A model generated the notes under the pieces. It made no database searches. It saw only the letters and a list, made by a program, of their open reading frames with translations, and was not told the origin of the DNA. A stretch of DNA of 64,000 bases from Macrostomum lignano (Eukaryota), in NCBI GenBank assembly GCA_002269645.1, contig NIVC01000100.1:434001-498000 (forward strand), given 5' to 3'. This document shows positions 8,305 through 45,654 of the stretch, one piece after another. Each line of letters starts with the position of its first letter. Positions within the stretch are counted from its first letter, which is position 1. Made by a program: the position numbers and the translations under genes.

Positions 8305-11300
8305 TCAGCACAAACACAGATCTTCGTCGTAGTCCTCCAGATCGTCGCTATTTCGTTGGTTGCCATGAAGACTGAAGCCTGTGTCGCGAGACGCGGAATC
8401 CTCCGCTTTACTATAATTGCGCGACATCATCGGCCGACTATTAACCAGCTTGTGGGCCAGAGTTAAGAATATCGACTCAACGTGATTAGCTTTAGAATCG
8501 TCTTTGGCGCTAGTCTCAAACAATGGCATAGAGTGACTGTCAGCGAATCGTTGAGCAGTTTGAGTTGGCACCGATTGTGCTGGCTCGTCACATTTATTGC
8601 CAATCAATAATCTGGGTATGTCGCCAGTTAAATAATGCTCCTCGCACTCTTGCAACCAGATTGGCAGACTATTAAAAGAGTTTGGCTTAGTCATATCGTA
8701 CACAAATACTACTGCGTGAACATTGCGATAGTAGTGCGGTAGCATGCTGCGGCGGAATCGCTCCTGTCCAGCCGTGTCCCAGAGTTGGAGCTGTGTTGGT
8801 TATTTCAATAGAATGGACAATTTAGTAAAGATCAAAGGTATCAGTTATTTTTACATTTTTATAATAATGTTTAGAGTTAGTTGAGAGCGATTTAAGAGCG
8901 ATGAGATTCAGGTGATCAGCTTTGGCATTCAGAGTGTAGCCAGGATTTTCTATATTTAGGGCGCCAGTACCAAGCGGCTTTAGGATGCTCTACATCTCTA
9001 AAGGCTTTAAGCACAAAGGGGCGCCAATAACAAGGGCCTTAGATAAAGCAAGGAAAAGCCTGAGTCTAAGCATTGAGGAAGACAATAAGGAAATGACAAC
9101 TTGGACTACTGAAAATTAAACATGACATCGGAATTTGTGGTACTAACATTTTTGCTAAAACAATATTGCATAACATAGTCTTAGCTATGAAAACTTGGAA
9201 AATTATCCTTCTTTTTATTAAAGCAAAAATGGATTTTTTGCATATTTTTGTGTTCTAATGCAAAAAGTACAAGGGTTGTCCCAGAAATATTGGGAAAAAC
9301 TGGTACAGAGGCTGACTGTGATATTCAAATTTGATGCAACTTTTGTCATAAGTAGAAAAAATCCAACGGTTGTTTTGGTTTTTAAATGGGCCAAAAATGT
9401 CAATTCTTTCAAAAGTTAGGCCTATAAATAGAACAAGGGGTTAGGGGTAGAGTTACAACCAAGTCCAGCCTACTATGCTGGCCATAGACTAAACTTTTGA
9501 TGTTTAGTCAGAACCATTGATTCGAAAACAAAAGCAAAGGAAGAAGCTGAAGAGAAACAAAAGAGCACATAAGCTCTCAAAAAAAGCAGAAGCTAATCTG
9601 AAGCAGAAGTGGAAGCAGAACAGCTGCAGGCTGCAGGCTGAGGGGTGACTTTGTTGAAAAATCATCAGTCAAGTGTGATGGCGATGCTGCGTGACCAACT
9701 TTGCAGACCCCTCAACTTGGTGTAACTCTACACCCCCACCCATTGTTCTATTTATAGGCACAACTTTTGAAAGAATTGACATTTTTACCCTATTTAAAAA
9801 GCAAAACAACCATTGGATTTTTTCTATTTATGATGAAAGTTGCATAAAATTCGAATATCATAGTCAGCCTCTATTTTGGTTTTTCCCACTGTTTCTAGGA
9901 CAACCCTTGTAGCATGTAACATAATACAACATAATATTATATGAAAAGAAATGGTGAAAGACTATTATATCAATAATGATTAAAAAAATTAAATATTTTA
10001 AATCCAACCTTAAAAACCTTTTATTCATATAAACACTATAACTTTATAAGTTAGTATTTACAAATTACAATATTATTTCTAGGCATGCAACTTGTTGTGA
10101 CCAAAAATGCAACTTATAAAAAGCTTAAGCAAAAATAATATAATTCTGTGTAAATAATAGGAAAACTATGACTATATTATATTAAGGCTAAATTCCAAGT
10201 TAACTAATTAGTAGTACAATGTTTATATTTGTTTGGGTGGGCATCTTTGTGACTTCCTTGGCTGACCCTCTAACTAGCCAGCCAGATTGTCTAGTCAATA
10301 TTGTTAAAACAAGCTTGGCCAGATGTTATGCATATATTGTCACTTAATTTCAATAAATTTGCTGGATCTAGACTAGAAACTCAGCCTTTTAAACTTTATT
10401 GGTATAATGCATATACAACACCTAGCAAACCTGGCCAAACTGGCTTAGTAAAAAAAGCTACTTCCCTAAAAATTGACCCTAAAAATGAAAACTTAAAAAG
10501 GATAATCAAGGAGCCAAAGAACCAAAAAATTCAAAATAAAAAAGAAAAATGAGGAAAAGACAAAGATGAAAGAAACAAAATAAATAACAATAGCTCAAGA
10601 CAAAGGGTTAAAAGGGGTAAGTAATCTAAGTAATAGCTATTACTTAAATTAAATTGCTAAAACAAACCAACCATAAACAAATGCATAATAAATGCTTAGC
10701 TAATTATATCAAGATAAAATGTTACACAAGAGATTGTGAGACAGGAACATATTATTTTAAATTCTAAAATCTTACTTATGACTCCATAACACTTCTATTT
10801 TTGGATTTTTTAATGTAGTGTAAAAGTCTACATATTAATTTTGCAAATATTTGTCTTTTTATTTGTCTTTGATTTCTTTCTTAATCTTTTGTAATCTTTT
10901 TAATCTTTCTTAATTCTTTCTTAATCTTTTGTACCTTTTTGCTATACCTGCTAATGATATTGAAACAACCTTCCTATTTGTATTTTATTATGAGCTAATT
11001 AACTTTCATGTTTCAGAAAAATAAGTTGATAAAAAAATTGATAATTACAAATGTAAGCCAAAAAAATTAGTGCACACCTATTCTTAAAAATCTGCTAGTG
11101 TTGCAACAAAAATGACCTTTTATATTGTGAAATAGACCTTTTTTGACAAACAAATTGGTTTATTTTTTTCTGTTTTTGGCATTAATATTTATAGTAGAAA
11201 ATTGATACATATAAAGATTTGTTTAAATGCTTTACTATAAGCTTAAAATCTTGGAAAGAGGGAAATTTCTATTAAGAAATAAACTTTTTTGATTTTTTTT

Positions 11301-26570: not shown

Positions 26571-26720
26571 AGATCTGTAGTTCTTCTGATTTAAAGTTCC
26601 CTTCTATAGATTCGTCACCCTAAAAATATTTTGCTTAAAAACCCTCGAGGTCATCTGTGACATCCCATCTGGTGCATTAGCAGCCTACTGTAACCCAATA
26701 TTTCATGACTGCCAACAACC

Positions 26721-29348
26721 ATGAGCGGCCCAATGTCTTCGCTCAACAAATCGCGTCGAATGCCGTTTAAACCGCCATCGAATCCGAATTTTGGCGGCGC
26801 TAACAATAACATCAATACTACTCATAGCAACAGTAGTAGAAGTAGTAGTAGGCAGTCCAGCGATTTGACAACTGGAACAGGCGGTGGCGGTTCTAAGAGG
26901 TCTTCGCCTCGGCTGCCCCCAATGTCTTCTTTATCCACTATTGACGACAAAAGTCTGGGCTCGCCGAAATCTGCAAAGACTGCGGAAGACGATTCGGAGT
27001 TGCTTAAATTAGCCAACGAAGTTCTTGATGACGAAGTCAGTCGTAGAATGCGACGCGATAGGCAGAAGCGCGAAACTGCGACAGTGAAATCTGCTGATCG
27101 ACCGCCGAGTGCCCGGGGGAACAGCGACGCAGACCTGCTGGCCACTGCCGTCAGCCGGGTCGGAGCTCTTGAACGGCTGTGCAAGGAGCAGCGGGAGGAG
27201 CTGAGCAGGCGGCAGCGAAGGATCGACGTGCTAGAGGATAAGGTCTGTCTTGGTGTGCAGCTGCCCTCCCAGATCTTCAGTTGCTGGACCAGCCTCCCGA
27301 ATACTCAGTTGCTGGGCCATCCTCCCAGATCCTCAGTTGCTGGGCCAGCCTCCCAGATCCTCAGTTGCTGGGCCAGTGTCTCAGATCCTCAGTTGCTGGG
27401 CCATTCTCCCAGATCCTCAGTTGCTGGGCCATTCTCCCAGATCCACAGTTGCTGGGCCAGCCTCCCAGATCCTCAGTTGCTGGGCCATCCAGATCTTCAG
27501 TTGCTGGGCCAGCCTCCCAGATCCTCAGTTGCTGGGCCAGTCTCCCAGATCCTCAGTTGCTGGGCCATTCTCCCAAATCCTCAGTTGCTGAGCCAGCCTC
27601 CCAGATCCTCAGTTGCTGGGCCATCCAGATCTTCAGTTGCTGGGCCAGCCTCCCAGATCCTCAGTTGCTGGGCCAGTGTCTCAGATCCTCAGTTGCTGTG
27701 CCAGCCTCCCAGATCCTCAGTTGCTGGGCCATCCTCCCAAATCCTCAGTTGCTGGGCCAGCTTCCCAGATCTTCAGTTGCTGACTTGCTGGGCCATCCTC
27801 CCAAATCCTCAGTTGCTGGGCCAGCCTCCCAGATCTTCAGTTGCTGGGCCAGCCTCCCAGATCTTCAGTTGCTGGGCCAGCCTCCCAGATCCTCAGTTGC
27901 TGGGCCATTCTCCTAGATCCTCAGTTGCTGGGCCAGCTTCCCAGATCCTCAGTTGCTGGGCCAGCCTCCCAGATCCTCAGTTGCATGGCCAGTCTCCCAG
28001 ATCCTCAGTTGCTGGGCCATTCTCCCAAATCCTCAGTTGTTGAGCCATCCTCCCAGATCCCCAGTTGCTGTGCCAGTCTCCCAGATCCTCAGTTGCATGG
28101 CCAGCCTCCCAGATCCTCAGTTTCTGGGCCAGTCTCCCAGATCCCAGACAGCTGCATGTTTACATAAATCAATAGCAGCATTCGCAGTCACCAGGTTATA
28201 GTCAATAACACCAATCGTGTTGTGCACAATTCACTCAGGTTCGCCTTCTGACCACAGCCGCTGGCGCAGCCAAAGGCAGCTCCAGAGAAGTGGACTCTCT
28301 GCGATCGCGCTGCCGTGAACTGCAAAAGCAAGTCCACGAGATGGAGAATTTCTTAGCCGATTACGGATTAATCTGGGTTGGAGAAGATGACGCAGATGAG
28401 GCTGCCGACTGGAACTGGGATCCCAGCAGTTTCTGGCGTCCCAAAGATTCGACATCAACCGATGCAGCAGCTGATAGCATTGAGGCCACTCCAAACTTTT
28501 TCAATCGTCTATTAGAATGCATCAGGGAATTGAATCGTCTGGTTGGCGAGGACGAACTGCAAGTGACCAAAACTGGCACTGGAGCTAAACTAGCCAGACA
28601 AAAGTTGGAGTCTGCTATACCTTTATCAGTGTACGCCAATGGTCTGGCTCTGTGGGATGGTCCGTTTCGATTATACACCGAGCCGTCCACTAGGCAGCTG
28701 GTTGCGGACATTCTTGACGGCTATTTTCCAACAGAATTGCAGAGTCGCTATCCGGATGGCGTAGCATTTGTGGTTAACGATAGGAGAGAGGTGCAGTTTG
28801 ACTCTACTAGCAGTAATAGTACACTTGGATTCGCTGGTCAAGGCCGAGTGCTGGGCGGTGGTAGCAGAGATGATCAACAACAGCAGCAGAGACGTCAGCA
28901 GTTCTTAGGCCGTCTGCCAGCCTCGGTTGTGGCAAAATCTGGTCAGCTGGTCGATGTCCGGCAGTCAGTAGCTGATACATTAAGCGCCGGTCATGAGCAG
29001 CAACTACCAGCTCGTCAGCTGTCAAACGTGTTGATTGACGCTTCAGGCGACACCCCAGCCGATCGGGTTGCATCTGTAAAGATTCGATGCAATGTCAGAC
29101 AGGCCAATGCTGGTACATATTTAATCAGATTGCCGTTTAATTCGAAAGTGTCTCAGCTATTTAGCTTGTTGAGAGATCGGGGTGCAATGTCCAATTTAAA
29201 CATTGCCAATGGCGAACAAGTTGCTCTGGTGAATGCTTATCCAAGATCTACGCTAAGTGAGGATGGCGAATCAACGGCTACTGTGGAAGAGTGCGGACTG
29301 GCACCTAATGCTACTCTGATGCTAGTTGTGCAGAAGATTAATAAGTAG
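26721..29348 (+). CDS. UBXN11: UBX domain-containing protein 11 (SEP + UBX), about 543 aa; join(26721..27242,28239..29348)
   Basis: LQKQVHEMENFLADYGLIWVG signature; SEP-like LSVYANGLALWDGPFRLY..QLVADILDGYFPTELQSRYPDGV; C-terminal UBX-like ..APNATLML. Phase-0 intron AAG|GTCTGT ... CTCAG|GTT; AATAAA near 29786. Confidence 0.92.
27262..28148 (+). repeat. 28-bp minisatellite filling the UBXN11 intron
   Basis: Same family as 1-236 and 4470-4963, in the opposite genomic orientation. Confidence 0.95.
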
Positions 29349-32046: not shown

Positions 32047-32126
32047 AGCTTATATTTTGCAGTGCATAACTGCTACTTTAAGTATCAAATAGATGTATTT
32101 TTAACGCAATTCATGCAACACTAAGA

Positions 32127-34902
32127 ATGTCCTATCAGCTATCAACATCCCCTTTAAGTCAGCTGTTCGCTGACGCCAGCACTAAAGACAAATTTGGTAA
32201 ACAGATTCGCGAGGTCATAATGCAGTATTGCTATCGGACTGGGCTGCTACCTGACGGAGCTGATGACAAAACAATTGATGCCTCAGTGGCCAGTTTGAAT
32301 GAACTTGATGAAGCCGCTAGCAGCTGGTCAAGCTTGCAGGTGCGCTAAGCTGATGTCTGCTGACTGACGCGCCACCACGACCCCTTGACTTAGTAGTTTC
32401 TTAGAAAAGGCAGTCTTGGCATCCCTTGTTTCTCTGGGACTCTGGTTTATCCTATAATTTTTTGTTTCTTAGAAAGGCGATGTTCACTCTGCTTTTTCTT
32501 TAAAAAATCTTTAGTTAACGTATATAGGTTTTTTACAGAGTTTAATTTATCCAGCACCTGAAGTTTCTTAGAAAGACCAGTTAAGCCAGAATTTTTATTT
32601 TCTTAGAAAGGCCTTTTTTCGCTAGCTTAAACAGTTTCTTAGAAACAAAAGGCCAGTTTAGCCAGCATTTGCAGTTTCTTAGAAAAGAAAGGCCAGTTCA
32701 GCCAGCATTTGCAGTTTCTTAGAAACAAAAGGCCAGTTCAGCCAGCATTTGCAGTTTCTTAGAAACAAAAGGCCAGTATAGCCAACATTTGCAGTTTCTT
32801 AGAAACAAAAGACCAGTATAGCCAACATTTGCAGTTTCTTAGAAACAAAAGGTCAGTTAAGCCAGAATTTACAGTTTCTAAGAAACAAAGGCCAGTTCAG
32901 CCAACATTTGCAGTTTCTTAGAAAAGAAAGGCCAGTTCAGCCAACATTTGCAGTTTCTTAGAAAAGAAAGGCCAGTTTAGCCAGTATTTGCAGTTTCTTA
33001 GAAAAGAAAAGCCAGTATAGCCAACATTTGCAGTTTCTTAAAAAGTTTCTTAGAAAGTTAAGTTTACCTCACACATGATCAGCCACTACCCCCATCCGAT
33101 AACCCAGGTGTGCAGTCTGGCGGAGGTGGCTCAACCCCAGAAGCCTCTATTAGGCTGCATCATATTTTATCCAACCTACTCAACTTGGGTTGGCGGCCGG
33201 CTCAGACTGGGGCTAGTGCAGTGCGACAGCAGCCAGCAGTCAAATCAGCAGCTGCTCTATAGCCTGCTCAGATCCGTGATCTGCCGGGCGTTGGATGATG
33301 AAGATTTGCAACGGATTGAACTGCTGCATCCGGCTTCTGATGCTGCCGTATATGGACCGCTCATGCAGCTGGGGTTTGAAGATCTCACTCAGACTGAGGA
33401 GTGGCATTTTGCCAGGTGATTTCTTGAATAATAAACGCCACACCCAGGATCAGAAACCCCACACGCCAGAATCAGAAACCCCACACCCTAGAATCAGAAA
33501 CCCCACACCCTAGAATCAGAAACACCACACCCTAGAATTAGAAACACCACACCCTAGAATCAGAAACACCACACCCTAGAATCAGAAACACCACACCCTA
33601 GAATCAGAAACCCCACACCCAGAATCAGAAACCCCACATCCCAGAATCAGAAACCCCACATCCCAGAATCAGAAACCCCACACCCTAGAATCAGAAACCC
33701 CACACCTCAGAATCCGAAATCCCACACCCTTGAGATCCCATTATCTAACTCGAACGCACAAATCTCCCCACCACGCAGGCTGGACAGGGACGGATTGCAA
33801 AACCTGGCCGAACGTCCGGCAAAGTCCGGCATAGCTGTCCGGGCTGGCGCCGAGTCCGACTGCGCCGAAGTGATGAAGATGATTCATGGATTGGCCAGCT
33901 TTGAAAAACTTCAAGCTCAGGTGAGTTTGTTTTGGCGCCGAAATAAGATAGTAATGGCCCCAAAATTAAATAGTAATGGCCCCAAAATTAAATAGGAATG
34001 TCGCCAAAATTAGATAGGAATGGCGCCAAAATTAGATAAGAATGGCGCCAAAATAAGATAGGAATGGCGCCAAAATTATATAGGAATGGCGCCAAAATTA
34101 GATAAGAATGGCGCCAAAATAAGATAGGAATGGCGCCAAAATTAGATAAGAATGTCGCCAAAATAAGATAGGAATGGCGCCAAAATTAGATAAGAATGTC
34201 GCCAAAATAAGATAGGAATGGCGCCAAAATTAGATAAGAATGTCGCCAAAATAAGATAGGAATGGCGCCAAAATTAGATAAGAATGTCGCCAAAATAAGA
34301 TAGGAATGGCGCCAAAATTAGATAAGAATGTCGCCAAAATAAGATAAGGAATGGCGCCAAAATTAGAAGTTAAAAGCGCGATTAAAAACTTTTTAAACTG
34401 GCGCCAAAAGCCTCACGAGACTACTTACTACTCGTGCAGCAGTAGAAATGCAAGCATTTTCATTCTAAACTATTTTCATTCCAAGGTCCGCATCAACGAG
34501 GATCAATTGAGACGGGATATTTTTGGCGAGCGCAAATTTGCTCAACTATTCATAGCTGAGCGCTCGAATTCGGGGGAAATTCTTGGCTACGCGTTGGCAT
34601 TCGACGAGTTCTGGCCCAGTGGTCGCGGAGTTTGCTTAGAAGACGTGTTCGTTCAGCCGGCGCATCGCGGCAAAGGCGTCTGTAGCGCCCTGTTCTCAGC
34701 TGTGGCTCGCGACTCGCTTTATAATCGGCGTTGCCATTTTATGAGCCTCTGTTATCTGGCTTGGAATTCCGCCGCCTTTGATGTTTACCGACACTACGGC
34801 TTTGTAGACATCACCGGCTCTGATAGCTCCAAGTCGAATGGGGCGCATTTTTTAAGATTGTCGCGCGACCAGTTCCGATCCGCGCTTGGCCGGGCTCTGT
34901 AG
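32127..34902 (+). CDS. Tandem two-domain SSAT-like GNAT acetyltransferase, about 359 aa; join(32127..32339,33108..33415,33779..33920,34486..34902)
   Basis: Three phase-compatible GT-AG introns. Domain 1 has GCIIFYPTYSTWVG and LGFEDLT..EEWH; domain 2 has SDCAEVMKMIHGLASFEK, LEDVFVQPAHRGKGV, WNSAAFDVY and YGFVDIT. Confidence 0.85.
32560..33055. repeat. About 40-bp minisatellite in GNAT intron 1
   Basis: GCAGTTTCTTAGAAACAAAAGGCCAGTTCAGCCAGCATTT units. Confidence 0.9.
33440..33730 (+). repeat. About 22-bp minisatellite in GNAT intron 2
   Basis: AGAATCAGAAACCCCACACCCT units; inverted relative at 36505-36760. Confidence 0.9.
33940..34400. repeat. 22-bp minisatellite in GNAT intron 3
   Basis: GGAATGGCGCCAAAATTAGATA-type units. 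Confidence 0.92.
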
Positions 34903-35294
34903 TATGATTTGGGCGCGCTGTCCTCAGTAGCCTACTGATAGTAGAAATATTGACATTTTTGTCGAATTTCTTTTCTCTCCGCTAAAAATCCTATTGACAA
35001 TCAATATAGGGTCAAATTTTCCACGTTTGTGTAGAAATTTCGATTTTCATTGTTTTGGTTTTGTTTTCAAACAGGAAAAATCTGTTTATTTTGATTTGTT
35101 ATTACATTATTGTGCAGCTTATTACTTGTTATTTCGGCTTCTAGCAGTTTAATACTGTCATTAACCTATATTAGTATTGTTCTGATTGTTTTCCATGTCA
35201 AGTAATTTTGTTAAGGATTGGTCAGTGGCAATCAGTAATGTGCACGACTTAATTGTGCACAGCTTTTATTATGGGACCTTTTGTGCACATACTA

Positions 35295-35935
35295 ACTCTC
35301 CCTCTACCTCTACCCTCCCACTCATCCTCTCTCTCCCTCTCCCCCTCTCCGTCTCTCCCCTCTCCGTCTCTCCCTCTACCTCTACCCTCCCACTCATCCT
35401 CTCTCTCCCTCTCCCCCTCTCCGTCTCTCCCCTCTCCGTCTCTCCCTCTACCTCTACCCTCCCACTCATCCTCTCTCTCCCTCTCCCCTCTCCGTCTCTC
35501 CCCTCTCCGTCTCTCCCTCTACCTCTACCCTCCCACTCATCCTCTCTCTCCCTCTCCCCTCTCCGTCTCTCCCCTCTCCGTCTCTCCCTCTACCTCTACC
35601 CTCCCACTCATCCTCTCTCTCCCTCTCCCCCTCTCCGTCTCTCCCCTCTCCGTCTCTCCCTCTACCTCTACCCTCCCACTCATCCTCTCTCTCCCTCTCC
35701 CCCTCTCCGTCTCTCCCCTCTCCGTCTCTCCCTCTACCTCTACCCTCCCACTCATCCTCTCTCTCCCTCTCCCCTCTCCGTCTCTCCCCTCTCCGTCTCT
35801 CCCTCTACCTCTCCCCTCCCTCTTACCCCTCTCTCTGTCCCTCTCCCTCTACCCTCTCTCTCCCTCTCTTCCTCACCCTCTCCCCTCTCCATCCCGCTCT
35901 CTTACCCTTTCCCCCTCTTCATCTCGCAACTTTTC
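35295..35935. repeat. CT-rich tandem repeat, unit about 67 bp
   Basis: Almost purely pyrimidine strand; recurring CTCTACCTCTACCCTCCCACTCATCC. Confidence 0.9.
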
Positions 35936-36504
35936 CTCTAGTTTTATATAAGTGATTTCAATGTTATTTAGTATTATTTATTTACAGATATCATCTAGTA
36001 TTCTTTATTAGTTAGTACTCAATTATTTCTGTAAATTTCTTGAAGCAAAATACTAACAAAAAGTTTCATAAGCGCCCAGTTGTCTGCATTCAAATAAACA
36101 GACCTTATTAATATTACTATAATTATCTTATTCTGAGCCTCTTGCAAGACGGGTGCTTTGCAGTTAAATTTTTTTTTGCCTACATTTCCCTTTTTTAATT
36201 TCCGATCAGCTTACAAAGATAATTATTTAATTAATTACAATATAAGTCTGCCAGTCGTGTGATCTCCATATTTCTATTGTCTTATTTAGTACATCTATTA
36301 GCTTCAATATTTGTTAATCCACTTAATCATTATTCCATTTATTTTTGTTCTTATAATAAATGTAGTCAAAGTGATTTTGGCTTCTACCTGCTAATATTTT
36401 GCCTGTTTATGTTATATGAATCTACTGTATTCATTCAATAGGTTTTCCACAGGAGTTTTATTCTAGCTAATTTCAGTTTTAATAGGTTTTAGATGAGGCT
36501 TTTC

Positions 36505-36760
36505 TGACTCTCTGTGTGGGATTTCCGATTCTGAGGTGTGGGCTTTCTGATTCTAGGGTGTGGGGTTTCTGATTCTAGGGTGTGGAGTTTCCGATTCTGG
36601 AGTGTGGGGTTTCCGATTCTGGAGTGTGGGGTTTCCGATTCTGGAGTGTGGGGTTTCCGATTCGGAGTGTGGGGTTTCCGATTCTGGAGTGTGAGGTTTC
36701 CGATTCTGGAGTGTGGGGTTTCCGATTCGGAGTGTGGGGTTTCCGATTCTGGAGTGAAGG
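36505..36760 (-). repeat. 22-bp minisatellite, inverted relative of 33440-33730
   Basis: GATTCTGGAGTGTGGGGTTTCC units; reverse complement GGAAACCCCACACTCCAGAATC. Confidence 0.88.
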
Positions 36761-36893
36761 TTTTCTGTGTTTGAGTGTGAGATTGCTGTATTTGGGTGTG
36801 GGATTTCTGATTGAAGGTACTTAGAAAAGTTTCTAGATTCAGCGTGTTACACTTATTGTATTCATGCAACTGCAATCGGAGTAGTAGACCAGA

Positions 36894-37399
36894 ATGGACA
36901 CTCTGGGCGGTCTGCAAGCTCTGCAAACTCTGCTGAAGCCGCCAGGCGGCGGTCAAGATGAAGACAGCGACAGCGAGTCAGAGTCGGGCGGCCAGCAGCG
37001 CAAGAATCACTACGCCAAGCTGAACCCGGGAGACATCGGCAGCAAGCCTTCGTCTGCGCCAGCTGCTGACCAGTCAGGCGACGCCGCTGCTAAACTGCCG
37101 CAGGCGAACCCCAACGATATCTGGCATCCCGACGAAATTGGCGAAGGCGAATCCGGCGTCCTTGACGACCGTCTGGACCCCCGAGCTCAGCCGGAGTACG
37201 AGATGCACTTCCGGCAGGCTGTGTCGCCTGAGGACATGTTTCTGGGCACCGGGAATAAGACTCCGGCTACCGCCAGCTGCGAGCAGATGGTGGTGAGCAG
37301 TCTTGTAGCTAACGCTGACTGCTGAGCACAGGATAGCGCAAGCCAGTACTGTACGCAGGCACTACTACTACTGCTATACTACTACTACTGATACTACTA

Positions 37400-37445
<46 letters not shown>

Positions 37446-40400
37446 TCGAATTGCTAGTGAATTAGTCCGTCAAGTTTCCCAATACCCACTCACATTGACA
37501 TTGCAATGCCCACAACAAGCTGGCTCATGCATCATCTATCAGTACGATAATTATTGTTTGATCTAGGCTAAGCGGGAAAAAAAACAATTTTGTTTCTATG
37601 TGAAAGAAACTGCGCAAAGCGCTGAACTCTCAAGCTGGACTCAATATATATACACGGATGTTGCCTGAGCCAAAGCAAGCAAGACATCATCAGCTATGCA
37701 TAGCCAATCGAGCAAAGCATTCCCTACCGATCGGCAATTGACTTTGCGTCAAAAGATTCACAAAGGCTGGCACTGGAGCAATGGAATAGGCAGCTACGGT
37801 AGCCTCTCAGATCAGAGCATAACCGACTCAGAGCTGGATCACGTGACTAAAGTTATGAAACGTTGGGAAGCTTTGCAACTGGCTGACACGTTGCGTTTAC
37901 ACGGCGCCGCTCAGAGATTGCGCTGTTTAAAGAAATCTCTAGCCGGAGATGGAATCCAGTCTTGCTTGATGTGCGGCTTGAGACTGGCTAATGCGTCTCA
38001 TTGCTGCTTCCCCGGCTCCTTTGCTGCTTCAGCTGGCACCATGTGCTGTCTCTGCGGACTGCGATTCTGTGCTGACTGTCTGTGAGTACCTGCGGCAGCT
38101 CGTGCGGTTTTCTTAAAATCATCTGATTTAGCATTTACATAATCTGACATGATTTCTCACAATCTGATATGATTTCTGACAATCCGACATGATTTCTGAC
38201 AATCCGACATGATTTCTGACAATCCGTCATGATTTCTGACAACTTGACTTGATTTCTGACAATCTGACATGATTTCTGACAATCTGATATGATTTCTGAC
38301 AATCTGACATGATTTCTGACAATCTGATATGATTTCTGACAATCTGACATGATTTCTGACAATTTGATATGATTTCTGACAATCTGACATGATTTCTGAC
38401 AATCTGACATGATTTCTGACAATTTGACATGATTTCTGACAATCTGACATGATTTCTGACAATCTGACATGATTTCTGACAATTTGACATGATTTCTGAC
38501 TATATAACACGATAACTGACACTCTGACACATTAGTTGACAATCTGACACAGTTGTTGACAATCTGACACAGTTGTTGACAATCTGACACAGTTGCTGAC
38601 AATCTGACACAGTTTTTGACAATCTGACACGGTTGTTGACAATCTGACAATCTGACAGTCTGACAATCTGACACAGTTGTTGACAATCTGAAACAGTTGC
38701 TGACAATCTGACACAGTTGTTGACAATCTGACACAGTTGTTGACAATCTGACACATTAGTTGACAATCTGACAGTTGCTGACAATCTGACACAGTTGTTG
38801 ACAATCTGACAATCTGACAGTCTGACAATCTGACACAGTTGTTGACAATCTGACACAGTTGTTGACAATCTGACACAGTTGCTGACAATCTGACACAGTT
38901 GTTGACAATCTGACACAGTTGCTGACAATCTGACACAGTTGCTGACAATCTGACACAGTTGTTGACAATCTGAAACAGTTGCTGACAATCTGACACAGTT
39001 GCTGACAATCTGACACAGTTGTTGACAATCTGACACAGTTGCTGACAATCTGACACAGTTGCTGACAATCTGACACAGTTGTTGACAATCTGACACAGTT
39101 GCTGACAATCTGACACAGTTGTTGACAATCTGACACAGTTGTTGACAATCTGACACAGTTGCTGACAATCTGACACAGTTGCTGACAATCTGACACAGTT
39201 GTTGACAATCTGACACAGTTGTTGACAATCTGACACAGTTGCTGACAATCTGACACAGTTGCTGACAATCTGACACAGTTGTTGACAATCTGATACAGTT
39301 GCTGACAATCTGACACAGTTGTTGACAATCTGACACAGTTGCTGACAATCTGACACAGTTGTTGACAACCTGATACGATTTGTGACACTTGAAGTCCTGA
39401 CAGTTTGCCACAGATATTCTCAGTCAAGCGCTACTCAACCACACATGCCAGACCGCCTAAGGAAGATTCTCCAGCATCCACTCCATCCTGGAGCTCCACA
39501 GCCAGCTCCAACGCTGCCACCGCATCACCTCTAGCCGAGAAGGCCTGCCATTGCGCCAAGAAGCTGGTCTGCGAAGTTTGCCTACAAAGAAACCGGTTGC
39601 AGACAGAATCGGGCAGTTGGTGGCAAAACAATTCCGGCGCGATTTCGTCGGTTGTTGATAAGAAAATCTCTGTAACCGCCTGTCCCACAGCTGTGTCGCA
39701 AATGCCCAGTGTGAAGAAGTCAGACAGCTCCAAGTTGAACAGATTCGGGACAAGATCGGCGAGTGTCAGCTGCTACTGCTGTATTGGCAGCGCTCTGGCA
39801 ATGCGCAGGGCTGGTCTGCCCAAACTGAAGCTAATTAGGCCTGTTTTAACCGATTGAGACACGAACTGAATTATGCTTTATCGATAATAAATTAACAGAT
39901 CGTGCTGCTAAGACTGTTAGCGAGAGTTTTTGTCTTCCTTGCTGGTCTTGCTGTTTTCCTATCTTATGGTATTCCAGGTGCTATTCTTGTGCACTGATAA
40001 TCGACCTTTTGTTCATTTCAACCTGAGAATTCCCTTCAGTCTTACCTGAGAATCTCCTTCAATCTCACATGTGAATCGGCCCTCAATCTCACATGTGAAT
40101 CGGCCCTCAATCTCACCTCTGAGAATCGCCCCTCAATCATCTCACCTAAGAATCGCCCTGAATCTCACCTCTGAGAATCGCCCCTCAATCTCACCTCAGA
40201 ATCGCCCCTCAATCATCTCACCTAAGAATCGCCGCTCAATCTCACCTAAGAATTGCCCCTCAATCATCTCACCTAAGAATCGCCCTCAATCTCACCTCTG
40301 AGAATCGCCCCTCAATCATCTCACCTAAGAATCGCCACTCAATCTCACCTAAGAATCGCCCCTCAATCATCTCACCTAAGAATCGCCCTGAATCTCACCT

Positions 40401-41369
40401 CTGAGAATTGCCCCTCAATCTCACCTCTGAGAATCGCCCCTCAATCTCACCTCTGAGAATCGCCCCTCAATCATCTCACCTAAGAATCGGCCCTCAATCT
40501 CACCTTTGAGAATCGCCCCTCAATCTCACCTCTGAGAATCGCCCCTCAATCATCTCACCTAAGAATCGGCCCTCAATCTCACCTTTGAGAATCGCCCCTC
40601 AATCTCACCTCTGAGAATCGCCCCTCAATCTCACCTCAGAATCGCCCCTCAATCATCTCACCTAAGAATCGCCGCTCAATCTCACCTAAGAATTGCCCCT
40701 CAATCATCTCACCTAAGAATCGCCCTCAATCTCACCTCTGAGAATCGCCCCTCAATCATCTCACCTAAGAATCGCCACTCAATCTCACCTAAGAATCGCC
40801 CCTCAATCATCTCACCTAAGAATCGCCCTCAATCTCACCTCTGAGAATCGGCCCTCAATCTCACCTCTGATAATCGCCCCTCAATCTCACCTCTGATAAT
40901 CGCCCCTCAATCCCACCTGAGAATCGGCTCTCAATTTCATTTGAGAATCGTCGTTCAATCTCACCTGAGAATCGGCCCTCAATCTCACCTCCTAGAATCG
41001 CCCCTCAATCTCACCTGAAGATCGGTAAAGAGAAGCCTTTTTAAATCTACAACATTTTAGCTTACCAAAGTTCGTGCTGCATTCACTACTAGTTTAGCCA
41101 ACAATTTCAGTAGTAACGCACGCACATCTTCACCCCCCTTCTCCTCCGCGCAGATCAGCATTAAACTGCCTGGCACAAAATCTGCTAACGAATTAAACTT
41201 GGACATTCGCGAGAAATTTCTTGACCTTCGTTCGGCTCGTTACCGGCTGGGTTTGCACCTGCCCAATGCGGTGGACCCAGATTCGGGTAGCGCCAAATTC
41301 GACTGCGACTCTGCCAGCCTAACTATCATTCTCAACAATAAGCGGGAGTATGACTTTGTTAATTTTTAG
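36894..41369 (+). CDS. PIH1D3: PIH1D3/DNAAF6 dynein axonemal assembly factor, about 204 aa; join(36894..37292,41154..41369)
   Basis: NDIWHPDEI..DDRLDPRAQPEYEMHFRQAVSPEDMFLG.GNKTPATASCEQMV joins in phase 0 (GTG|GTGAGC ... CGCAG|ATC) to ISIKLPGT..LDIREKFLDLRS..L.LHLP..KREYDFVNF. Confidence 0.92.
37361..37445. repeat. (ACT)n microsatellite
   Basis: Read directly. Confidence 0.95.
37696..39857 (+). CDS. RPH3AL: Noc2/rabphilin-like Rab effector (Rab-binding zinc domain only, no C2), about 279 aa, nested in the PIH1D3 intron; join(37696..38081,39404..39857)
   Basis: PTDRQLTLRQKIHKGW matches the Noc2/rabphilin motif PNDRQLALRAKLxxGW. GDGIQSCLMCG, CCLCGLRFCADC, LVCEVC and SGSWW (SGAWF motif) also present. 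Donor CT|GTGAGT; the frame-compatible acceptor is CTGACAG at 39403. Confidence 0.82.
38135..39372. repeat. Two adjacent 20-bp minisatellite subfamilies in the intron of the nested gene
   Basis: ATCTGACATGATTTCTGACA (38135-38500), then ATCTGACACAGTTGTTGACA (38520-39372). Confidence 0.95.
40020..41025. repeat. 24-29-bp minisatellite (CTCAATCTCACCTCTGAGAATCGCCC)
   Basis: Tandem units; inverted relative at 45050-45350. Confidence 0.93.
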
Positions 41370-41614
41370 CATCAGTTTTCTTGTTAGAACACATTCCAAT
41401 TGTGAGTAGGCTGTGCCGAATATCCGTCCAATATAATTATGTACTCAAATTATTGCTTGCATTCACGCGGATGTGTCTTAATAAAGCTTTACCGTGTGCC
41501 TTTTCTGATGAAAATATGTTTTGTTTCATATTACTAATAAAAATAGTCATTCTTTTCGAATTTGTTATTTTGTCAATCATAATGTGAATCACATGACTTG
41601 ATTCAACGAGATTT

Positions 41615-41870
41615 ACTCTACTGATGAGTGACCATAGAGTGACTCAATTCAGGAGATTCACACTACCGATGAGTGAGGGACCGGACTGACTCAATTCAGG
41701 AGATTCACACTACCGATGGGTGAGGGACCGGACTGACTCAATTCAGGAGATTCACACTACTGACAAGTGACCAGATAGTGACAATTTAGGGAGATTCACA
41801 CCATTCTGACAAGTGACCAGAGAGTGACTCAATTTAGCGACATTCCCGCTACTGATGAGTGACTCCATTC
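41615..41870. repeat. Degenerate tandem repeat, unit about 44 bp
   Basis: Recurring GACTCAATTCAGGAGATTCACACTAC(T/C)GATGAGTGA. Confidence 0.75.
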
Positions 41871-42579
41871 ACACTATATTGGCTCTAGTTAGTGACTAGA
41901 TCAGTGACTATAGAATCGCAGCTAACCTCTCACTAATGCTGAATGAGACACTTCAGTCTGGTTAAATAATTAATAGCTAGCATTTAGCCAGAAATCTTTC
42001 ACCTGGCCTGGGCAGTGAGTGCTTGATAAGCTACCTATTTGAAGAGAATTAAATGAAGCGACATCTTGCTAATCTCAGCGGGGGATCCTGGAATTTCAAC
42101 CACTCACTCGCTCAGATTCTGTTATAGTCAAAGAGTGACAATCAATAATTGAACAGGTATATTTAGTGTGAAGTTGAAAGTTTTTTTTGCGTCAGGTAAT
42201 TAGTTATAAATATTGCATTGCTCGCAAATTATTTCATCCTGCATCCAACTGCGGTGCAGCTTCATCATTCTTGCCTCACTTAAGGGTGAATTTTAAGTGG
42301 AAGCTGGATCACTTGATGACGTGACACGGGAAACCCTGACGGATTGTTCAAAGGTAAAAACCTGATCCTTACTCCATACACACCAGTATATTGCACAGAT
42401 AATCTTCACCTGTCTTTGCATTGTGTGCTCAGTCATGGATACTTCAAAACAGAACTTGGGTTGCCAAGTCTTAAGTTTGTTTTTTCAGTTAGGGCAACTT
42501 TATATGAATAATATTTTACTGAATCTGTCATGATTTCGGCTTGGTCAAACCCAAGCTTAGCATTCCAGATATTTGAATT

Positions 42580-44990
42580 GAGGTGGGCGATTCTCAAGGA
42601 AATTTGGAGGCGAATCTCAAGGAGATTTGGGGGCGATTCTCAAGGAGATTTAGGGACGATTCTCAAGGAAATTTGGAGGCGATTCTCAAAGAAATTTGGG
42701 GACGATTCTCAAGGAGATTTGGGGGCGATTCTCAAGGAGATTTGGAGGCGATTCTCAAGGAGATTTGGGGGCGATTCTCAAGGAGATATGGGGACGATTC
42801 TCAAGGAAATTTGGAGGCGATTCTCAAAGAAATTTGGGGGCGATTCTCAAGGAAATTTGGGGGCGATTCTCAAGGAGATTTGGGGGCGATTCTCAAGGAG
42901 ATTTGGAGGCGATTCTCAAGGAGATTTGGGGGCGATTCTCAAGGAAATTTGGGGGCGATTCTCAAGGAGATTTAGAGGCGATTCTCAAGGAAATTTGGGG
43001 ACGATTCTCAAATAAATTTGGGGGCGATTCTCAAGGAGATTTGGGGGCGATTCTCAAGGAGATTTGGGGGCGATTCTCAAAGAAATTTGGGGACGATTCT
43101 CAAGGAGATTTGGGGGCGATTCTCAAGGAAATTTGGGAGCGATTCTCAAAGAGATTTGTGGGCGATTCTCAAGGAGATTTGGAGGCGATTCTCAAGGAGA
43201 TTTGGGGGCGATGCTCAAAGAGATTTGGAGGCGATTCTCAAGGAGATTTGGGGACGATTCTCAAGGAAATTTGGGGGCGATTCTCAAGGAAATTTGGGGG
43301 CGATTCTCAAGGAGATTTGGGGGCGATTCTGAAGGAGATTTAGGGGCGATTCTCAAGGAGATTTAGGGGCGATTCTCAAGGAGATTTGGGGGCGATTCTC
43401 AAGGAGATTTAGGGGCGATTCTCAAGGAGATTTAGGGGCGATTCTCAAGGAGATTTGGGGGCGATTCTCAAAGAAATTTGGAGACGATTCTCAAAGAGAT
43501 TTGGGGGCGATTCTCAAGGAAATTTGGGAGCGATTCTCAAAGAGATTTGTGGGCGATTCTCAAGGAGATTTGGGGGCGATTCTCAAGGAGATTTAGGGGC
43601 GATTCTCAAGGAGATTTAGGGCGATTCTCAAGGAGATTTGGGGGCGATTCTCAAGGAGATTTAGGGGCGATTCTCAAGGAGATTTAGGGGCGATTCTCAA
43701 GGAGATTTGGGGGCGATTCTCAAGGAGATTTGGGGGCGATTCTCAAAGAAATTTGGAGGCGATTCTCAAGGAGATTTGGGGACGATTCTCAAGGAAATTT
43801 GGGGGCGATTCTCAAAGAGATTTGGGGGCGATTCTCAAGGAGATTTGGAGGCGATTCTCAAGGAGATTTGGGGGCGATGCTCAAAGAGATTTGTGGGCGA
43901 TTCTCAAGGAGATTTGGGGACGATTCTCAAGGAAATTTGGGGGCGATTCTCAAGGAAATTTGGGGGCGATTCTCAAGGAGATTTGGGGGCGATTCTCAAG
44001 GAGATTTAGGGGCGATTCTCAAGGAGATTTAGGGGCGATTCTCAAGGAGATTTGGGGGCGATTCTCAAGGAGATTTAGGGGCGATTCTCAAGGAGATTTA
44101 GGGGCGATTCTCAAGGAGATTTGGGGGCGATTCTCAAAGAAAGTTGGGGACGATTCTCAAGGAGATTTGGGGGCGATTCTCAAGGAAATTTGGGGGCGAT
44201 TCTCAAAGAGATTTGTGGGCGATTCTCAAGGAGATTTGGAGGCGATTCTCAAGGAGATTTGGAGGCGATTCTCAAGGAGATTTGGGGGCGATTCTCAAGG
44301 AAATTTGGGGGCGATTCTCAAGGAGATTTAGAGGCGATTCTCAAGGAAATTTGGGGGCGATTCTCAAGGAGATTTGGGGGCGATTCTCAAGGAGATTTAG
44401 GGGCGATTCTCAAGGAGATTTAGGGGCGATTCTCAAGGAGATTTGGGGGCGATTCTCAAGGAGATTTGGGGGCGATTCTCAAAGAAATTTGGGGACGATT
44501 CTCAAGGAGATTTGGGGGCGATTCTCAAGGAAATTTGGGGGCGATTCTCAAAGAGATTTGTGGGCGATTCTCAAGGAGATTTGGAGGCGATTCTCAAGGA
44601 GATTTGGAGGCGATTCTCAAGGAGATTTGGGGGCGATTCTCAAGGAAATTTGGGGGCGATTCTCAAGGAGATTTAGAGGCGATTCTCAAGGAAATTTGGG
44701 GGCGATTCTCAAAGAGATTTGTGGGCGATTCTCAAGGAGATTTAGGGGCGATTCTCAAGGAGATTTAGGGGCGATTCTCAAGGAGATTTGGGGGCGATTC
44801 TCAATGAGATTTAGGGGCGATTCTCAAGGAGATTTAGGGGCGATTCTCAAAGAAATTTGGGGGCGATTCTCAATGAGATTTAGGGGCGATTCTCAAGGAG
44901 ATTTGGGGGCGATTCTCAAGGAGATTTGGAGGCGATTCTCAAGGAGATTTGGGGGCGATTCCTAAGAAGACTCGGATGATTCTCAATTAC
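42580..44990. repeat. 23-bp minisatellite (GGGGCGATTCTCAAGGAGATTTG)
   Basis: About 100 tandem units. Confidence 0.97.
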
Positions 44991-45049
44991 TCTGGCGATT
45001 CTCGAGGAGACTCTGGGAAGATTCTCAAGTAGATTCGGGGGCGATTTTC

Positions 45050-45350
45050 AAGAAGACTCAGGGCGATTCTCGAGGGAGATTAAGGGCCGATTCTCAGGTG
45101 AGATTGAGGGGTGATTCTCAGGTGAGATTGAAGGGTGATTCTCAGTTGAGATTGAGGGGCGATTCTCAGGTGAGATTGAGGGGCGGTTCTCAGGTGAGAT
45201 TGGGGGGCGGTTCTCAGGTGAGATTGAGGGGCGGTTCTCAGGTGAGATTGAGGGGCGATTCTCATTTCTCAGTTGAGATTGGGGGGCGGTTCTCAGGTGA
45301 GATTGAGGGGCGATTCTCAGGTGAGATTGGGGGGCGATTCTCAGGTGAGG
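45050..45350. repeat. 24-bp minisatellite (GGGCGATTCTCAGGTGAGATTGAG)
   Basis: Reverse complement of the 40020-41025 unit. Confidence 0.9.
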
Positions 45351-45654
45351 TAACTGCATGCAGTGCTGTATTGATGAGGTTTGGGTAGAGAACTGACACT
45401 CCATATTACGGTTTCCAAGTGTTCCTTGGCGCAATCCATGCAGCTCCAGCTCGACGCTCCCCTCGTCAACTGATCTACGTGACTGAAGAAGGAAAAAAAT
45501 TGTTTGACAAATTTTAAGTTACTCTTCTTACACAACGTGCGGTGGCCAAGCCATTGAGTGGGGGGGTTCGCTGTTTATAACTTGATGCTATCAGTGTGTT
45601 TGGTTGACTGGGCACGGGGCTTGGGTGTACATGTGTTTAGGGGCTGTTATAAAG

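What the first reader, a model, noticed from the sequence alone, without database searches (positions are those of the whole stretch)
36894..41369. Complete Noc2/rabphilin-like gene nested on the same strand inside the PIH1D3 intron
Seen: the 3.86-kb intron 37293-41153 contains a two-exon ORF (37696-38081, 39404-39857) with its own GT-AG intron and Rab-binding-domain motifs. An AG lies 2 nt before its ATG (CATCAG|CTATG). Splicing PIH1D3 exon 1 onto that AG is out of frame, so this is not a fusion isoform. Known: most nested genes are antisense, and same-strand nesting makes internal splice sites and poly(A) signals compete with host splicing. Inference: the inner mRNA may be released from the host pre-mRNA or its intron by spliced-leader trans-splicing, giving mutually exclusive or coupled output of a ciliary dynein assembly factor and an exocytosis effector.
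Basis: partly seen in the sequence, partly recalled or inferred. Interest (0 to 1): 0.8.

Follow-up and report, generated by a model that had tools for sequence, protein, structure and literature searches.

The report
Rab-effector gene nested in PIH1D3 intron
In the flatworm Macrostomum lignano, a small intact gene for a rabphilin/Noc2-like Rab-binding protein does sit on the same strand inside the only intron of the ciliary dynein-assembly gene PIH1D3/DNAAF6, but it has its own conserved promoter-like and poly(A) signals, so it looks like an ordinary, so far unannotated nested gene rather than a new trans-splicing mechanism.

Summary
The window is M. lignano Mlig_3_7 contig NIVC01000100.1, positions 434001-498000. 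Exons 36894-37292 and 41154-41369 encode the annotated 204-aa DNAAF6/PIH1D3 protein exactly. Its single phase-0 intron is at the same codon boundary as in the liver fluke ortholog. That intron holds a same-strand two-exon ORF for a C2-less rabphilin/Noc2-type Rab-binding domain. All eight zinc cysteines and the SGxW motif are present, and the domain is split across the inner intron.

A diverged homeolog (L007) has the same nesting. It shows that the inner exon 2 more likely starts at 39452 than at 39404, giving 263 aa. Between homeologs the inner CDS has no indels in 792 nt, against 12 in 779 nt of flanking non-coding DNA. However, its dN/dS is about 1, against 0.075 for the host.

The 250 nt upstream of the inner ATG, a TATATATA box 51 nt before it, and an AATAAA 28 nt after the stop are all conserved. 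The proposed SL acceptor (CATCAG|CT) lacks the species motif and a pyrimidine tract.

The most likely reading is an autonomous nested gene. Spliced-leader release from the host pre-mRNA is untested and disfavoured. NCBI lacks the inner gene, and UniProt carries chimeric fusion models.

The parts
36894..37292 (+). Host DNAAF6/PIH1D3 exon 1 (CDS, 133 codons, ends in phase 0; donor GTGAGC at 37293)
   Evidence: 100% identity to BOX15_Mlig019242g1; PIH1_CS domain.
37293..41153 (+). The only host intron (3861 nt, phase 0, between V133 and I134). Position and phase are identical to an intron of the Opisthorchis felineus ortholog.
   Evidence: O. felineus junction CEFLV|ARIRLPG versus CEQMV|ISIKLPG here.
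37361..37445 (.). (ACT)n microsatellite in the host intron
   Evidence: Its length varies between copies.
37446..37695 (+). Conserved 5' flank of the inner gene, a putative promoter or leader. It is 97.5% identical to the homeolog, against about 90.5% for other non-coding DNA.
37645..37652 (+). TATATATA (fits TATAWAWR), 51 nt upstream of the inner ATG and conserved in all three copies. It predicts a TSS near 37675, downstream of the out-of-frame uATG at 37658.
   Evidence: (only 5 plus-strand matches in the 38-kb GC-richer half of the window).
37692..37693 (+). It is conserved, lacks T at -5 and has a purine-rich upstream stretch.
   Evidence: plus the motif from PMC8629364.
37696..38081 (+). 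Inner gene exon 1 (CDS). It encodes the N-terminal PxDRQLxLRxKxxxGW motif, the SHD1 helix and the first three CxxC pairs. Donor GTGAGT at 38082.
   Evidence: (tblastn E 1e-10 to 1e-15).
38082..39451 (+). It is filled by a 20-nt tandem array at 38141-39387.
39452..39857 (+). Inner gene exon 2 (revised CDS start; stop TGA at 39855-39857). It encodes the fourth CxxC pair and the SGSWW (SHD2) motif, followed by a low-complexity tail.
   Evidence: The acceptor CATGCCAG|ACCGCC is identical in the homeolog.
39886..39891 (+). AATAAA poly(A) signal of the inner gene, 28 nt after the stop. It and the about 57 nt after the stop are conserved in the homeolog, and similarity decays after that.
40046..41016 (.). 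26-nt satellite array in the host intron. The same satellite lies inverted at 42585-45356, downstream of the host gene.
41154..41369 (+). Host exon 2 (CDS, 71 codons plus stop; acceptor CTCCTCCGCGCAG)
41480..41485 (+). First AATAAA after the host stop codon

Best explanation
This is a genuine same-strand ('parallel') nested gene pair in Macrostomum lignano. The host is the two-exon ortholog of the axonemal dynein assembly factor DNAAF6/PIH1D3. Its single intron is ancient and holds a compact two-exon gene. That gene encodes a rabphilin-family Rab-binding domain (helix, double zinc finger, SGxW helix) without C2 domains, so its architecture is Noc2-like.

The inner gene most likely works as an autonomous transcription unit. 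Its promoter would lie in the conserved 250 nt upstream of its ATG, with a TATA box at -51 and a predicted TSS near 37675. It has its own GT-AG intron (38082-39451) and its own AATAAA (39886). Host mRNA production then requires Pol II to read through the inner poly(A) site, and the spliceosome to pair 37293 with 41153 across the inner gene.

Shown: the gene identities, the nesting, its conservation between homeologs, the intact ORFs, and the conserved flank, TATA and poly(A) signal. Inferred: promoter activity, TSS position, expression, Rab binding, and any interference between the two genes.

The confidence of 0.55 is for the whole statement, including the autonomous promoter. That a real nested rabphilin-like gene is present I put at about 0.9.
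For: - Host model: identical to the annotated protein, with the PIH1_CS domain continuous across the junction. Intron position and phase are shared with O. felineus.
- Inner protein, sequence: PDB rabphilin-3A RBD at E=2e-7 and 68 homologs aligned from their N-termini, including proteins named Rab effector Noc2. Rabphilins with C2 domains are also among the homologs. Eight invariant Cys and S198/W201 span both exons.
- Inner protein, structure: the AlphaFold core (helix 44-82, helix 186-197) matches 1zbd_B (E=4e-5) and melanophilin 2zet_C by Foldseek.
- No C2 exon anywhere in the 64-kb window.
- Nesting is present in L001 and in the diverged homeolog L007.
- Window versus L007: the inner CDS has 28 substitutions and 0 indels in 792 nt. 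Pooled non-coding DNA has 74 substitutions and 12 indel events in 779 nt.
- The 5' flank is 97.5% identical, and TATATATA, the ATG context and both inner splice sites are conserved.
- The 3' UTR is conserved up to and including AATAAA and then decays.
- TATAWAWR is rare on this strand, with 5 sites in 38 kb.
Against: - No transcript evidence could be reached. The inner protein is absent from the NCBI annotation, which was built from RNA-seq, and from every protein collection searched.
- dN/dS between homeologs is about 1.0 (6.5 synonymous and 21.5 non-synonymous changes; rough 95% range 0.4-2.7), against 0.075 for the host. Protein-level constraint is therefore weak or recent.
- The low divergence of the block could partly reflect gene conversion.
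- The Pfam FYVE_2 score of 22.8 is below the gathering cut-off of 27.2.
- TATATATA could be a chance (TA)4 run.
- The 9-mer ATCAGCTAT at the inner ATG recurs only once in the window, exactly at the annotated 5' boundary of the neighbouring acetyltransferase CDS. This hints that ATCAG|CTA may be a usable 5' processing site.
- The assembly was polished with RNA-seq reads, which may distort exon similarity between copies.
Confidence: 0.55

Rival explanations
1. The inner mRNA is cut out of the host pre-mRNA or its intron by spliced-leader trans-splicing at AG 37692-37693, plus cleavage at the inner poly(A) site. This would give coupled or mutually exclusive output of the two genes.
For: - M. lignano trans-splices about 30-39% of its genes and 45% of conserved ones.
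- A conserved CAG lies 2 nt before the ATG.
- The same 9-mer, ATCAGCTAT, marks the 5'-open CDS boundary of the neighbouring acetyltransferase gene.
- Upstream ATGs at 37658 and further 5' would be removed by trans-splicing.
Against: - The acceptor fails [T/C]TNCAG, and its -20..-3 stretch is 28% pyrimidine, the lowest value (shared with two other sites) among AGs in the scanned stretch 37313-37816.
- Both footprint-verified SL acceptors in this window are TTGCAG.
- A strong cis donor (37293, GTGAGC) lies upstream on the host pre-mRNA. By the Conrad 1993 rule quoted in PMC8629364, that converts trans- into cis-splicing.
- Conservation extends 250 nt upstream and includes a TATA box, more than an acceptor needs.
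- The SL ends in AUG, which would create an out-of-frame AUG 5 nt before the real one.
- No RNA-polishing footprint (CATG replacing the acceptor) is seen in any of the three copies, although that absence is weak evidence.
Confidence: 0.12
2. The inner gene is SL trans-spliced, but from its own primary transcript, which starts at an intronic promoter further upstream (37446-37640). The outron, with its upstream ATGs, would then be discarded.
For: - The base rate of trans-splicing among conserved genes is 45%.
- A conserved 250-nt flank could hold both a promoter and an outron.
- There are several upstream ATGs in that flank, which a leader would need to lose.
Against: - The same poor acceptor features apply.
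- The TATA box at -51 predicts a TSS only about 17 nt before the AG, too short for an outron with a branch point (inference).
Confidence: 0.18
3. The inner exons are cassette exons of the host gene. This would give a fusion isoform like UniProt A0A1I8IWL8 (322 aa): host exon 1, then 37704-37798, then 39452-39710, then host exon 2.
For: - The 4-exon path is open in the window. On L007 it reproduces A0A1I8IWL8 exactly.
- Both homeolog substitutions inside 37704-37798 are synonymous in that alternative frame (n=2 only).
Against: - Exon 37704-37798 is read out of the frame that carries the family-wide N-terminal motif.
- Its donor, CG|GTAGCC, is weak.
- The 118-aa insert would split the PIH1_CS domain at V133|I134.
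- The related UniProt models are visibly built on indel-ridden ML2 sequence (P0036, P0001).
- The NCBI RNA-seq-guided model is the plain two-exon host.
Confidence: 0.05
4. The inner ORF is a decaying or non-functional relic, or a very weakly constrained gene, that has not yet picked up a disabling mutation.
For: - dN/dS is about 1 between homeologs.
- It is absent from the RNA-seq-based NCBI annotation.
Against: - There are no indels in 792 nt, where 4.5-12 are expected from the flanks (P about 0.01 to 5e-6).
- None of the 20 amino-acid changes hits a family-invariant column.
- Splice sites, the TATA box and AATAAA are conserved.
- dN (0.036) is a third of the local neutral rate (host dS 0.114; non-coding 0.095).
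Confidence: 0.12

Closest known systems
Parallel (same-strand) nested intronic genes of animals
   Same: A complete gene with its own exons lies within one intron of a host gene on the same strand. Such cases are reported in human and in the ctenophore Hormiphora (PMC8527503, which cites Yu et al. 2005 for human and Henikoff et al. 1986 for fly).
   Different: The organism here also has SL trans-splicing and operons. The host has kept only this one intron. No expression data are available here.
Cholinergic gene locus (VAChT/unc-17 inside the first intron of ChAT/cha-1); from my own knowledge, not tested here
   Same: A same-strand guest gene sits in a host intron, with possible co-regulation of two functionally distinct proteins.
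   Different: In the cholinergic locus the two genes share a non-coding 5' exon and act in one pathway. Here host exon 1 is coding, joining it to the inner ATG region is out of frame or needs a weak AG, and the two proteins act in unrelated processes (dynein pre-assembly and Rab-dependent exocytosis).
Noc2 / RPH3AL and the rabphilin-3A Rab-binding domain (PDB 1zbd_B)
   Same: It shares the N-terminal PxDRQLxLRxKxxxGW motif, a long helix, four CxxC pairs and an SGxW helix. It has no C2 domains, like Noc2.
   Different: Vertebrate Rph3al arose by duplication and fission of vertebrate Rph3a (PMC2823689). The flatworm gene is therefore at most an independent N-terminal rabphilin derivative, comparable to Daphnia Rphl. 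It also has inserts of about 10 and about 40 aa in the zinc finger, and is only 21-27% identical to homologs.
M. lignano SL-resolved operons / transcriptional units (PMC5730564, PMC8629364)
   Same: Same-strand genes are transcribed from one precursor and separated by SL addition. The upstream SEP and acetyltransferase genes in this window look trans-spliced.
   Different: Operon genes lie one after another, each behind the previous gene's poly(A) site. Here the guest lies between two coding exons of the host, with no host 3' end upstream of it.

Membership tests
DNAAF6/PIH1D3 (host) | PIH1 CS-like domain above the Pfam gathering score, with full-length colinearity to orthologs | tested here: met
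   PF18201 scores 52.1 bits against a cut-off of 23.3. Identity to DNAAF6 of molluscs, annelids, flukes and vertebrates is 40-50% over 97-100% of the length.
DNAAF6/PIH1D3 (host) | Role in axonemal dynein pre-assembly | not testable with these tools
   Inferred from orthology only.
Rabphilin/Noc2/Slp-type Rab-binding domain (Pfam FYVE_2) | Pfam FYVE_2 match at or above the gathering score | tested here: not met
   The score is 22.8 bits against a cut-off of 27.2, E=1.1e-4, covering only exon 1.
Rabphilin/Noc2/Slp-type Rab-binding domain (Pfam FYVE_2) | Eight zinc-binding cysteines in four CxxC pairs, flanked by an N-terminal helix and a C-terminal SGAWF-type helix | tested here: met
   C90, C93, C117, C120, C125, C128, C185, C188, S198 and W201 are invariant in the alignment with 7 homologs. 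The 1zbd_B alignment covers both halves. The model has helices 44-82 and 186-197, and Foldseek hits 1zbd_B at E=4e-5 and 2zet_C.
Rabphilin/Noc2/Slp-type Rab-binding domain (Pfam FYVE_2) | GTP-dependent binding of Rab3/Rab27 | not testable with these tools
Noc2 (RPH3AL) proper | Rab-binding domain without C2 domains | tested here: met
   There is a stop at 39855 with AATAAA 28 nt later. tblastn with C2-bearing rabphilins finds no C2 exon in the 64 kb.
Noc2 (RPH3AL) proper | Orthology to vertebrate Rph3al (fission product of vertebrate Rph3a, linked to Doc2b) | tested here: inconclusive
   By Craxton 2010, Rph3al is a vertebrate-lineage fission product. The best hits mix short Noc2-named proteins and long rabphilins. 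No phylogeny was made. It should be called Noc2-like in architecture only.
Same-strand nested intronic gene | The whole guest CDS and its signals lie inside one host intron, on the same strand, and the host exons demonstrably belong together | tested here: met
   repeated in L001 and L007.
Same-strand nested intronic gene | A separate mature mRNA for the guest | not testable with these tools
   No RNA data could be reached. The gene is absent from the protein collections, and the paper supplements held no entry.
SL trans-spliced gene of M. lignano | Acceptor motif [T/C]TNCAG at the exon start | tested here: not met
   CATCAG has A at -5, and the upstream 18 nt are 28% pyrimidine. The motif is present at only about 44% of real sites, so this lowers the claim but does not exclude it.
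SL trans-spliced gene of M. lignano | No splice donor upstream in cis on the precursor (outron rule) | tested here: not met
   On the host pre-mRNA, the GTGAGC donor at 37293 lies 400 nt upstream. The rule would be met only if the gene has its own TSS.
SL trans-spliced gene of M. lignano | SL-containing reads at the 5' end | not testable with these tools
   An indirect proxy, the RNA-polishing footprint GCAG to CATG, is seen at the SEP and acetyltransferase genes but not here.
M. lignano operon (Ustyantsev & Berezikov criteria) | A downstream trans-spliced gene within 1 kb (repeat-adjusted) after the 3' end of the upstream gene | tested here: not met
   No host 3' end or AATAAA lies between 37293 and 37695. 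The guest sits between host coding exons.

The most novel reading that the evidence does not exclude
The guest mRNA is produced from the host pre-mRNA itself. SL trans-splicing at 37694, together with use of the guest poly(A) site, would compete with host splicing. Each primary transcript would then yield either the dynein-assembly factor mRNA or the Rab-effector mRNA. This would be an 'operon inside an intron'. It might also explain why this is the only intron the host gene has kept, and why synonymous sites of the guest are unusually conserved.
Probability: 0.1. Interest if true: 0.6.

Novelty: new member of a known kind. Interest (0 to 1): 0.3.

Why it matters
The practical value is mainly annotational. 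M. lignano appears to have a rabphilin/Noc2-type Rab effector gene that is missing from the NCBI gene set. In UniProt/WormBase ParaSite it is represented only by chimeric PIH1D3 fusion models (A0A1I8IWL8, A0A1I8FJP1, A0A1I8FH18, A0A1I8FAU4).

The locus is also a clean, homeolog-replicated example of a parallel nested gene in an animal that has SL trans-splicing, operons and working transgenesis. It could therefore serve as a test case for how internal promoters, splice sites and poly(A) sites are handled inside a host intron.

If the guest proved to be trans-spliced out of host pre-mRNA, that would be a new operon-like topology. Nothing found here favours that.

Tried and rejected
1. Assembly artefact: rejected. 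Three contigs and an independent assembly show the same order.
2. Selection signal from L001: uninformative. L001 and the window are identical across the whole gene, including unique intron DNA, apart from repeat-length changes.
3. Transcript evidence:
   - The inner protein is not in the 5.8-billion-cluster collection or the 1.84-billion representative set, apart from chimeric models.
   - 'Mlig019242' appears in no paper.
   - The supplements of PMC5816591 hold no Mlig019242, RPH3AL or PIH1D3 entry.
4. Conserved nesting in other flatworms: not found. tblastn with the guest and nine homologs finds nothing in the O. felineus and S. solidus DNAAF6 loci, including 10-kb flanks.
5. A longer rabphilin gene with C2 exons elsewhere in the window: none found.
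6. Other content of the host intron: the remaining ORFs are translations of tandem repeats. There are no Rfam families or tRNAs in the window and no SL RNA gene.
7. The bacterial promoter/terminator scan is irrelevant and found nothing.
8. ATCAGCTAT as proof of an SL site: not accepted. The acetyltransferase CDS boundary (32142) is 3 nt, not 0-2 nt, past the AG. The copy in L007 uses an upstream TTGCAG instead.

Full report
**Source and host gene**

The window is Macrostomum lignano assembly Mlig_3_7, contig NIVC01000100.1. Locus L002, fetched through the host protein, is base-for-base identical to window 26894-51369, so contig coordinate = window coordinate + 434000.

Exons 36894-37292 and 41154-41369 join through GTGAGC...CGCGCAG into a 615-nt ORF. 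Its 204-aa product is 100% identical to the annotated protein BOX15_Mlig019242g1 and 40-50% identical over its full length to DNAAF6/PIH1D3 of many animals. The PIH1_CS domain (52 bits against a cut-off of 23) runs straight across the junction.

In Opisthorchis felineus the ortholog has a phase-0 intron at exactly the same place (CEFLV|ARIRLPG versus CEQMV|ISIKLPG), plus at least four more introns. The M. lignano gene keeps only this one.

**The guest ORF**

- Pfam FYVE_2 is hit below threshold (22.8 against 27.2 bits).
- The rabphilin-3A Rab-binding domain (1zbd_B) is hit at E=2e-7 in two pieces, one per exon.
- An exhaustive HMMER search found 68 distant relatives, nearly all aligned from their own N-termini. 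They include short proteins named 'Rab effector Noc2' and long rabphilins with two C2 domains.
- In an alignment, M1, P10, D12, R13, L17, R18, G24, W25, all eight zinc cysteines and S198/W201 of the SGxW helix are invariant.
- An AlphaFold model is confident only in the core (helix 44-82, zinc finger, helix 186-197). Its best Foldseek hits are rabphilin-3A and melanophilin Rab-binding domains.
- No C2 exon exists anywhere in the 64 kb.

The protein is therefore Noc2-like in architecture. Vertebrate Rph3al is a lineage-specific fission product of Rph3a (PMC2823689), so orthology to Noc2 proper is not claimed.

**Paralogous loci**

L001 (NIVC01001833.1) is identical across the whole host gene apart from repeat lengths, so it gives no selection signal.

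Cluster look-up revealed a second host paralog, Mlig013996g1. Its locus L007 (NIVC01000327.1) is a true diverged homeolog with the same SEP - acetyltransferase - PIH1D3 order and the same nested gene.

The in-phase acceptor CATGCCAG|ACCGCC (39451|39452), identical in both copies, keeps both open. I therefore prefer CDS 37696-38081 + 39452-39857 (263 aa). The window copy could use both acceptors.

**Selection**

Nei-Gojobori results, window versus L007:

| Gene | Synonymous changes | Non-synonymous changes | dS | dN | dN/dS |
|---|---|---|---|---|---|
| Host | 15 | 4 | 0.114 | 0.0086 | 0.075 |
| Guest | 6.5 | 21.5 | 0.036 | 0.036 | 1.0 |

Divergence by segment:

| Segment | Length | Substitutions | Indel events |
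|---|---|---|---|
| Pooled unique non-coding | 779 nt | 74 (9.5%) | 12 |
| Guest CDS | 792 nt | 28 (3.5%) | 0 |
| Host CDS | 615 nt | 19 | 0 |
| 250 nt upstream of guest ATG | 250 nt | 6 | 5 |

- Absence of indels in the guest CDS is unlikely under neutrality. The expectation is 12 from length, or 4.5 if scaled to its lower substitution count, giving P about 5e-6 to 0.01.
- None of the 20 amino-acid changes touches a family-invariant column.
- The ORF is therefore being kept, but the protein evolves fast. Its synonymous sites are oddly conserved, which remains unexplained. Gene conversion, RNA-level constraint, or homogenisation during RNA-seq-based Pilon polishing of the assembly are all possible.

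**Signals around the guest**

All three copies keep the following:

- TATATATA at 37645-37652, 51 nt before the ATG.
- The sequence from there to the ATG, with one 2-nt indel.
- The GTGAGT donor.
- AATAAA 28 nt after the stop. 3'-UTR similarity decays beyond about 57 nt.

TATAWAWR occurs only five times on this strand in the 38-kb GC-richer half of the window. A TSS about 30 nt after the TATA box (about 37675) would lie downstream of the out-of-frame ATG at 37658 and of the in-frame stop at 37666, giving a clean leader of about 20 nt.

**The trans-splicing proposal**

- The M. lignano SL is CGGTCTCTTACTGCGAAGACTCAATTTATTGCATG. SL acceptors are enriched for [T/C]TNCAG, and 30-39% of genes (45% of conserved ones) are trans-spliced (PMC8629364, PMC5730564).
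- The proposed acceptor CATCAG|CTATG has the CAG but an A at -5. Its -20..-3 stretch is 28% pyrimidine, the lowest value of any AG scanned at 37313-37816 (two other sites, at 37345 and 37792, share that value).
- On the host pre-mRNA it has a strong donor upstream in cis. By the outron rule cited in PMC8629364, that favours cis-splicing, here to a frame with a stop after 15 codons.
- The SL's terminal AUG would sit 5 nt upstream of, and out of frame with, the guest AUG.
- In its favour, ATCAGCTAT occurs only twice in the window: here, and at the 5'-open CDS boundary of the acetyltransferase gene. That boundary is 3 nt past the AG, and the L007 copy starts instead at an upstream TTGCAG, so this is only a hint.

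I put trans-splicing from the host pre-mRNA at about 0.1, and trans-splicing of an own transcript at about 0.2.

**Fusion models**

UniProt A0A1I8IWL8 (P0115) equals host exon 1 + 11047-11141 + 12004-12262 + host exon 2 of L007. The same four-exon path is open in the window. Against it:

- It reads the first guest exon in a frame other than the one carrying the family motif.
- It uses a weak GTAGCC donor.
- It would split the CS domain.
- Sister models (A0A1I8FJP1, FH18, FJN2, FAU4) show frameshift scars of the older assembly.

I regard these models as ab initio artefacts. They do show that 'out of frame, hence no fusion' is not airtight. There is also a weak in-frame AG at 37682-83.

**Comparative context**

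The DNAAF6 loci of O. felineus and Schistocephalus solidus contain no Noc2-like exon in their introns or 10-kb flanks. The nesting is therefore not shared with Neodermata. It arose in, or was kept only in, the Macrostomum lineage, and it predates the divergence of the homeologs.

Same-strand nested intronic genes are a known class, including in trans-splicing ctenophores (PMC8527503).

**Verdict**

The gene identities are confirmed. The best explanation is an autonomous, weakly constrained, unannotated nested gene. Interest is modest.

Noticed in passing
window 26704-26707 (versus L001 1194-1197) and window 32112-32115 / L001 4955-4958 (versus L007 4398-4401): At two gene 5' ends, one copy reads TTGCAG|exon, a perfect SL-acceptor motif, while another copy reads TTCATG|exon. 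The last four outron bases are replaced by CATG, the 3' end of the spliced leader. These are the only multi-base differences of this kind among the three loci. The assembly was Pilon-polished with RNA-seq reads (PMC5730564). This therefore looks like a polishing artefact that doubles as a footprint of SL trans-splicing at the SEP-domain and acetyltransferase genes.
   Followed up: yes
window <=26709-29348 (SEP gene), 32142-34902 (acetyltransferase), 36894-41369 (PIH1D3); L003 1-5466 / 10001; L004 1483-8963 / 10001: A SEP-domain (p47/UBXN2-like) gene lies upstream of PIH1D3 on the same strand in M. lignano, Opisthorchis felineus and Schistocephalus solidus. It does not in an oyster or a rotifer. 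This is flatworm-wide microsynteny and possibly an ancient operon. In M. lignano the repeat-adjusted spacings are about 0.85 and 1.1 kb.
   Followed up: partly
window 37293-41153; L003 20166-24260: The M. lignano PIH1D3 gene has lost every intron seen in the fluke ortholog except the one that now holds the nested gene. Its position and phase are identical to the fluke intron. Intron loss through processed copies would have deleted the guest, which may explain why this intron was retained.
   Followed up: partly
window 37696-38081 and 39452-39857 versus L007 11039-11424 and 12004-12409: Synonymous divergence of the guest CDS (0.036) is a third of that of the surrounding host CDS (0.114) and of non-coding DNA (0.095), while its dN equals its dS. 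This is unexplained. Gene conversion, RNA-level constraint inside the host intron, or RNA-seq polishing of the assembly are candidates.
   Followed up: partly
window 32134-32142 and 37689-37697: The 9-mer ATCAGCTAT occurs only twice in the 64 kb, both on the plus strand. One is at the 5'-open CDS boundary annotated for the acetyltransferase gene, where an SL-donated AUG would be in frame. The other overlaps the guest ATG.
   Followed up: partly
window 40046-41016 and 42585-45356: The same satellite, with units of about 23-26 nt, lies in opposite orientations in the host intron and downstream of the host gene. The arms (up to 98 nt, 87% complementary) bracket host exon 2 and its 3' UTR. GC skew flips sign accordingly.
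   Followed up: partly
window 34002-45356 generally: The introns and intergenic DNA are dominated by tandem arrays with 20-72-nt units. Examples are 35296-35901 (CT-rich), 36514-36763 (22-mer) and 38141-39387 (20-mer inside the guest intron). Copy numbers differ between the three loci.
   Followed up: no
UniProt A0A1I8IWL8, A0A1I8FJP1, A0A1I8FH18, A0A1I8FJN2, A0A1I8FAU4 (P0115, P0001, P0003, P0036, P0037): Public M. lignano protein models from the older ML2 assembly merge PIH1D3 with pieces of the nested gene, or carry frameshifted translations. One is named 'Arf-GAP domain-containing'. They need correction.
   Followed up: yes
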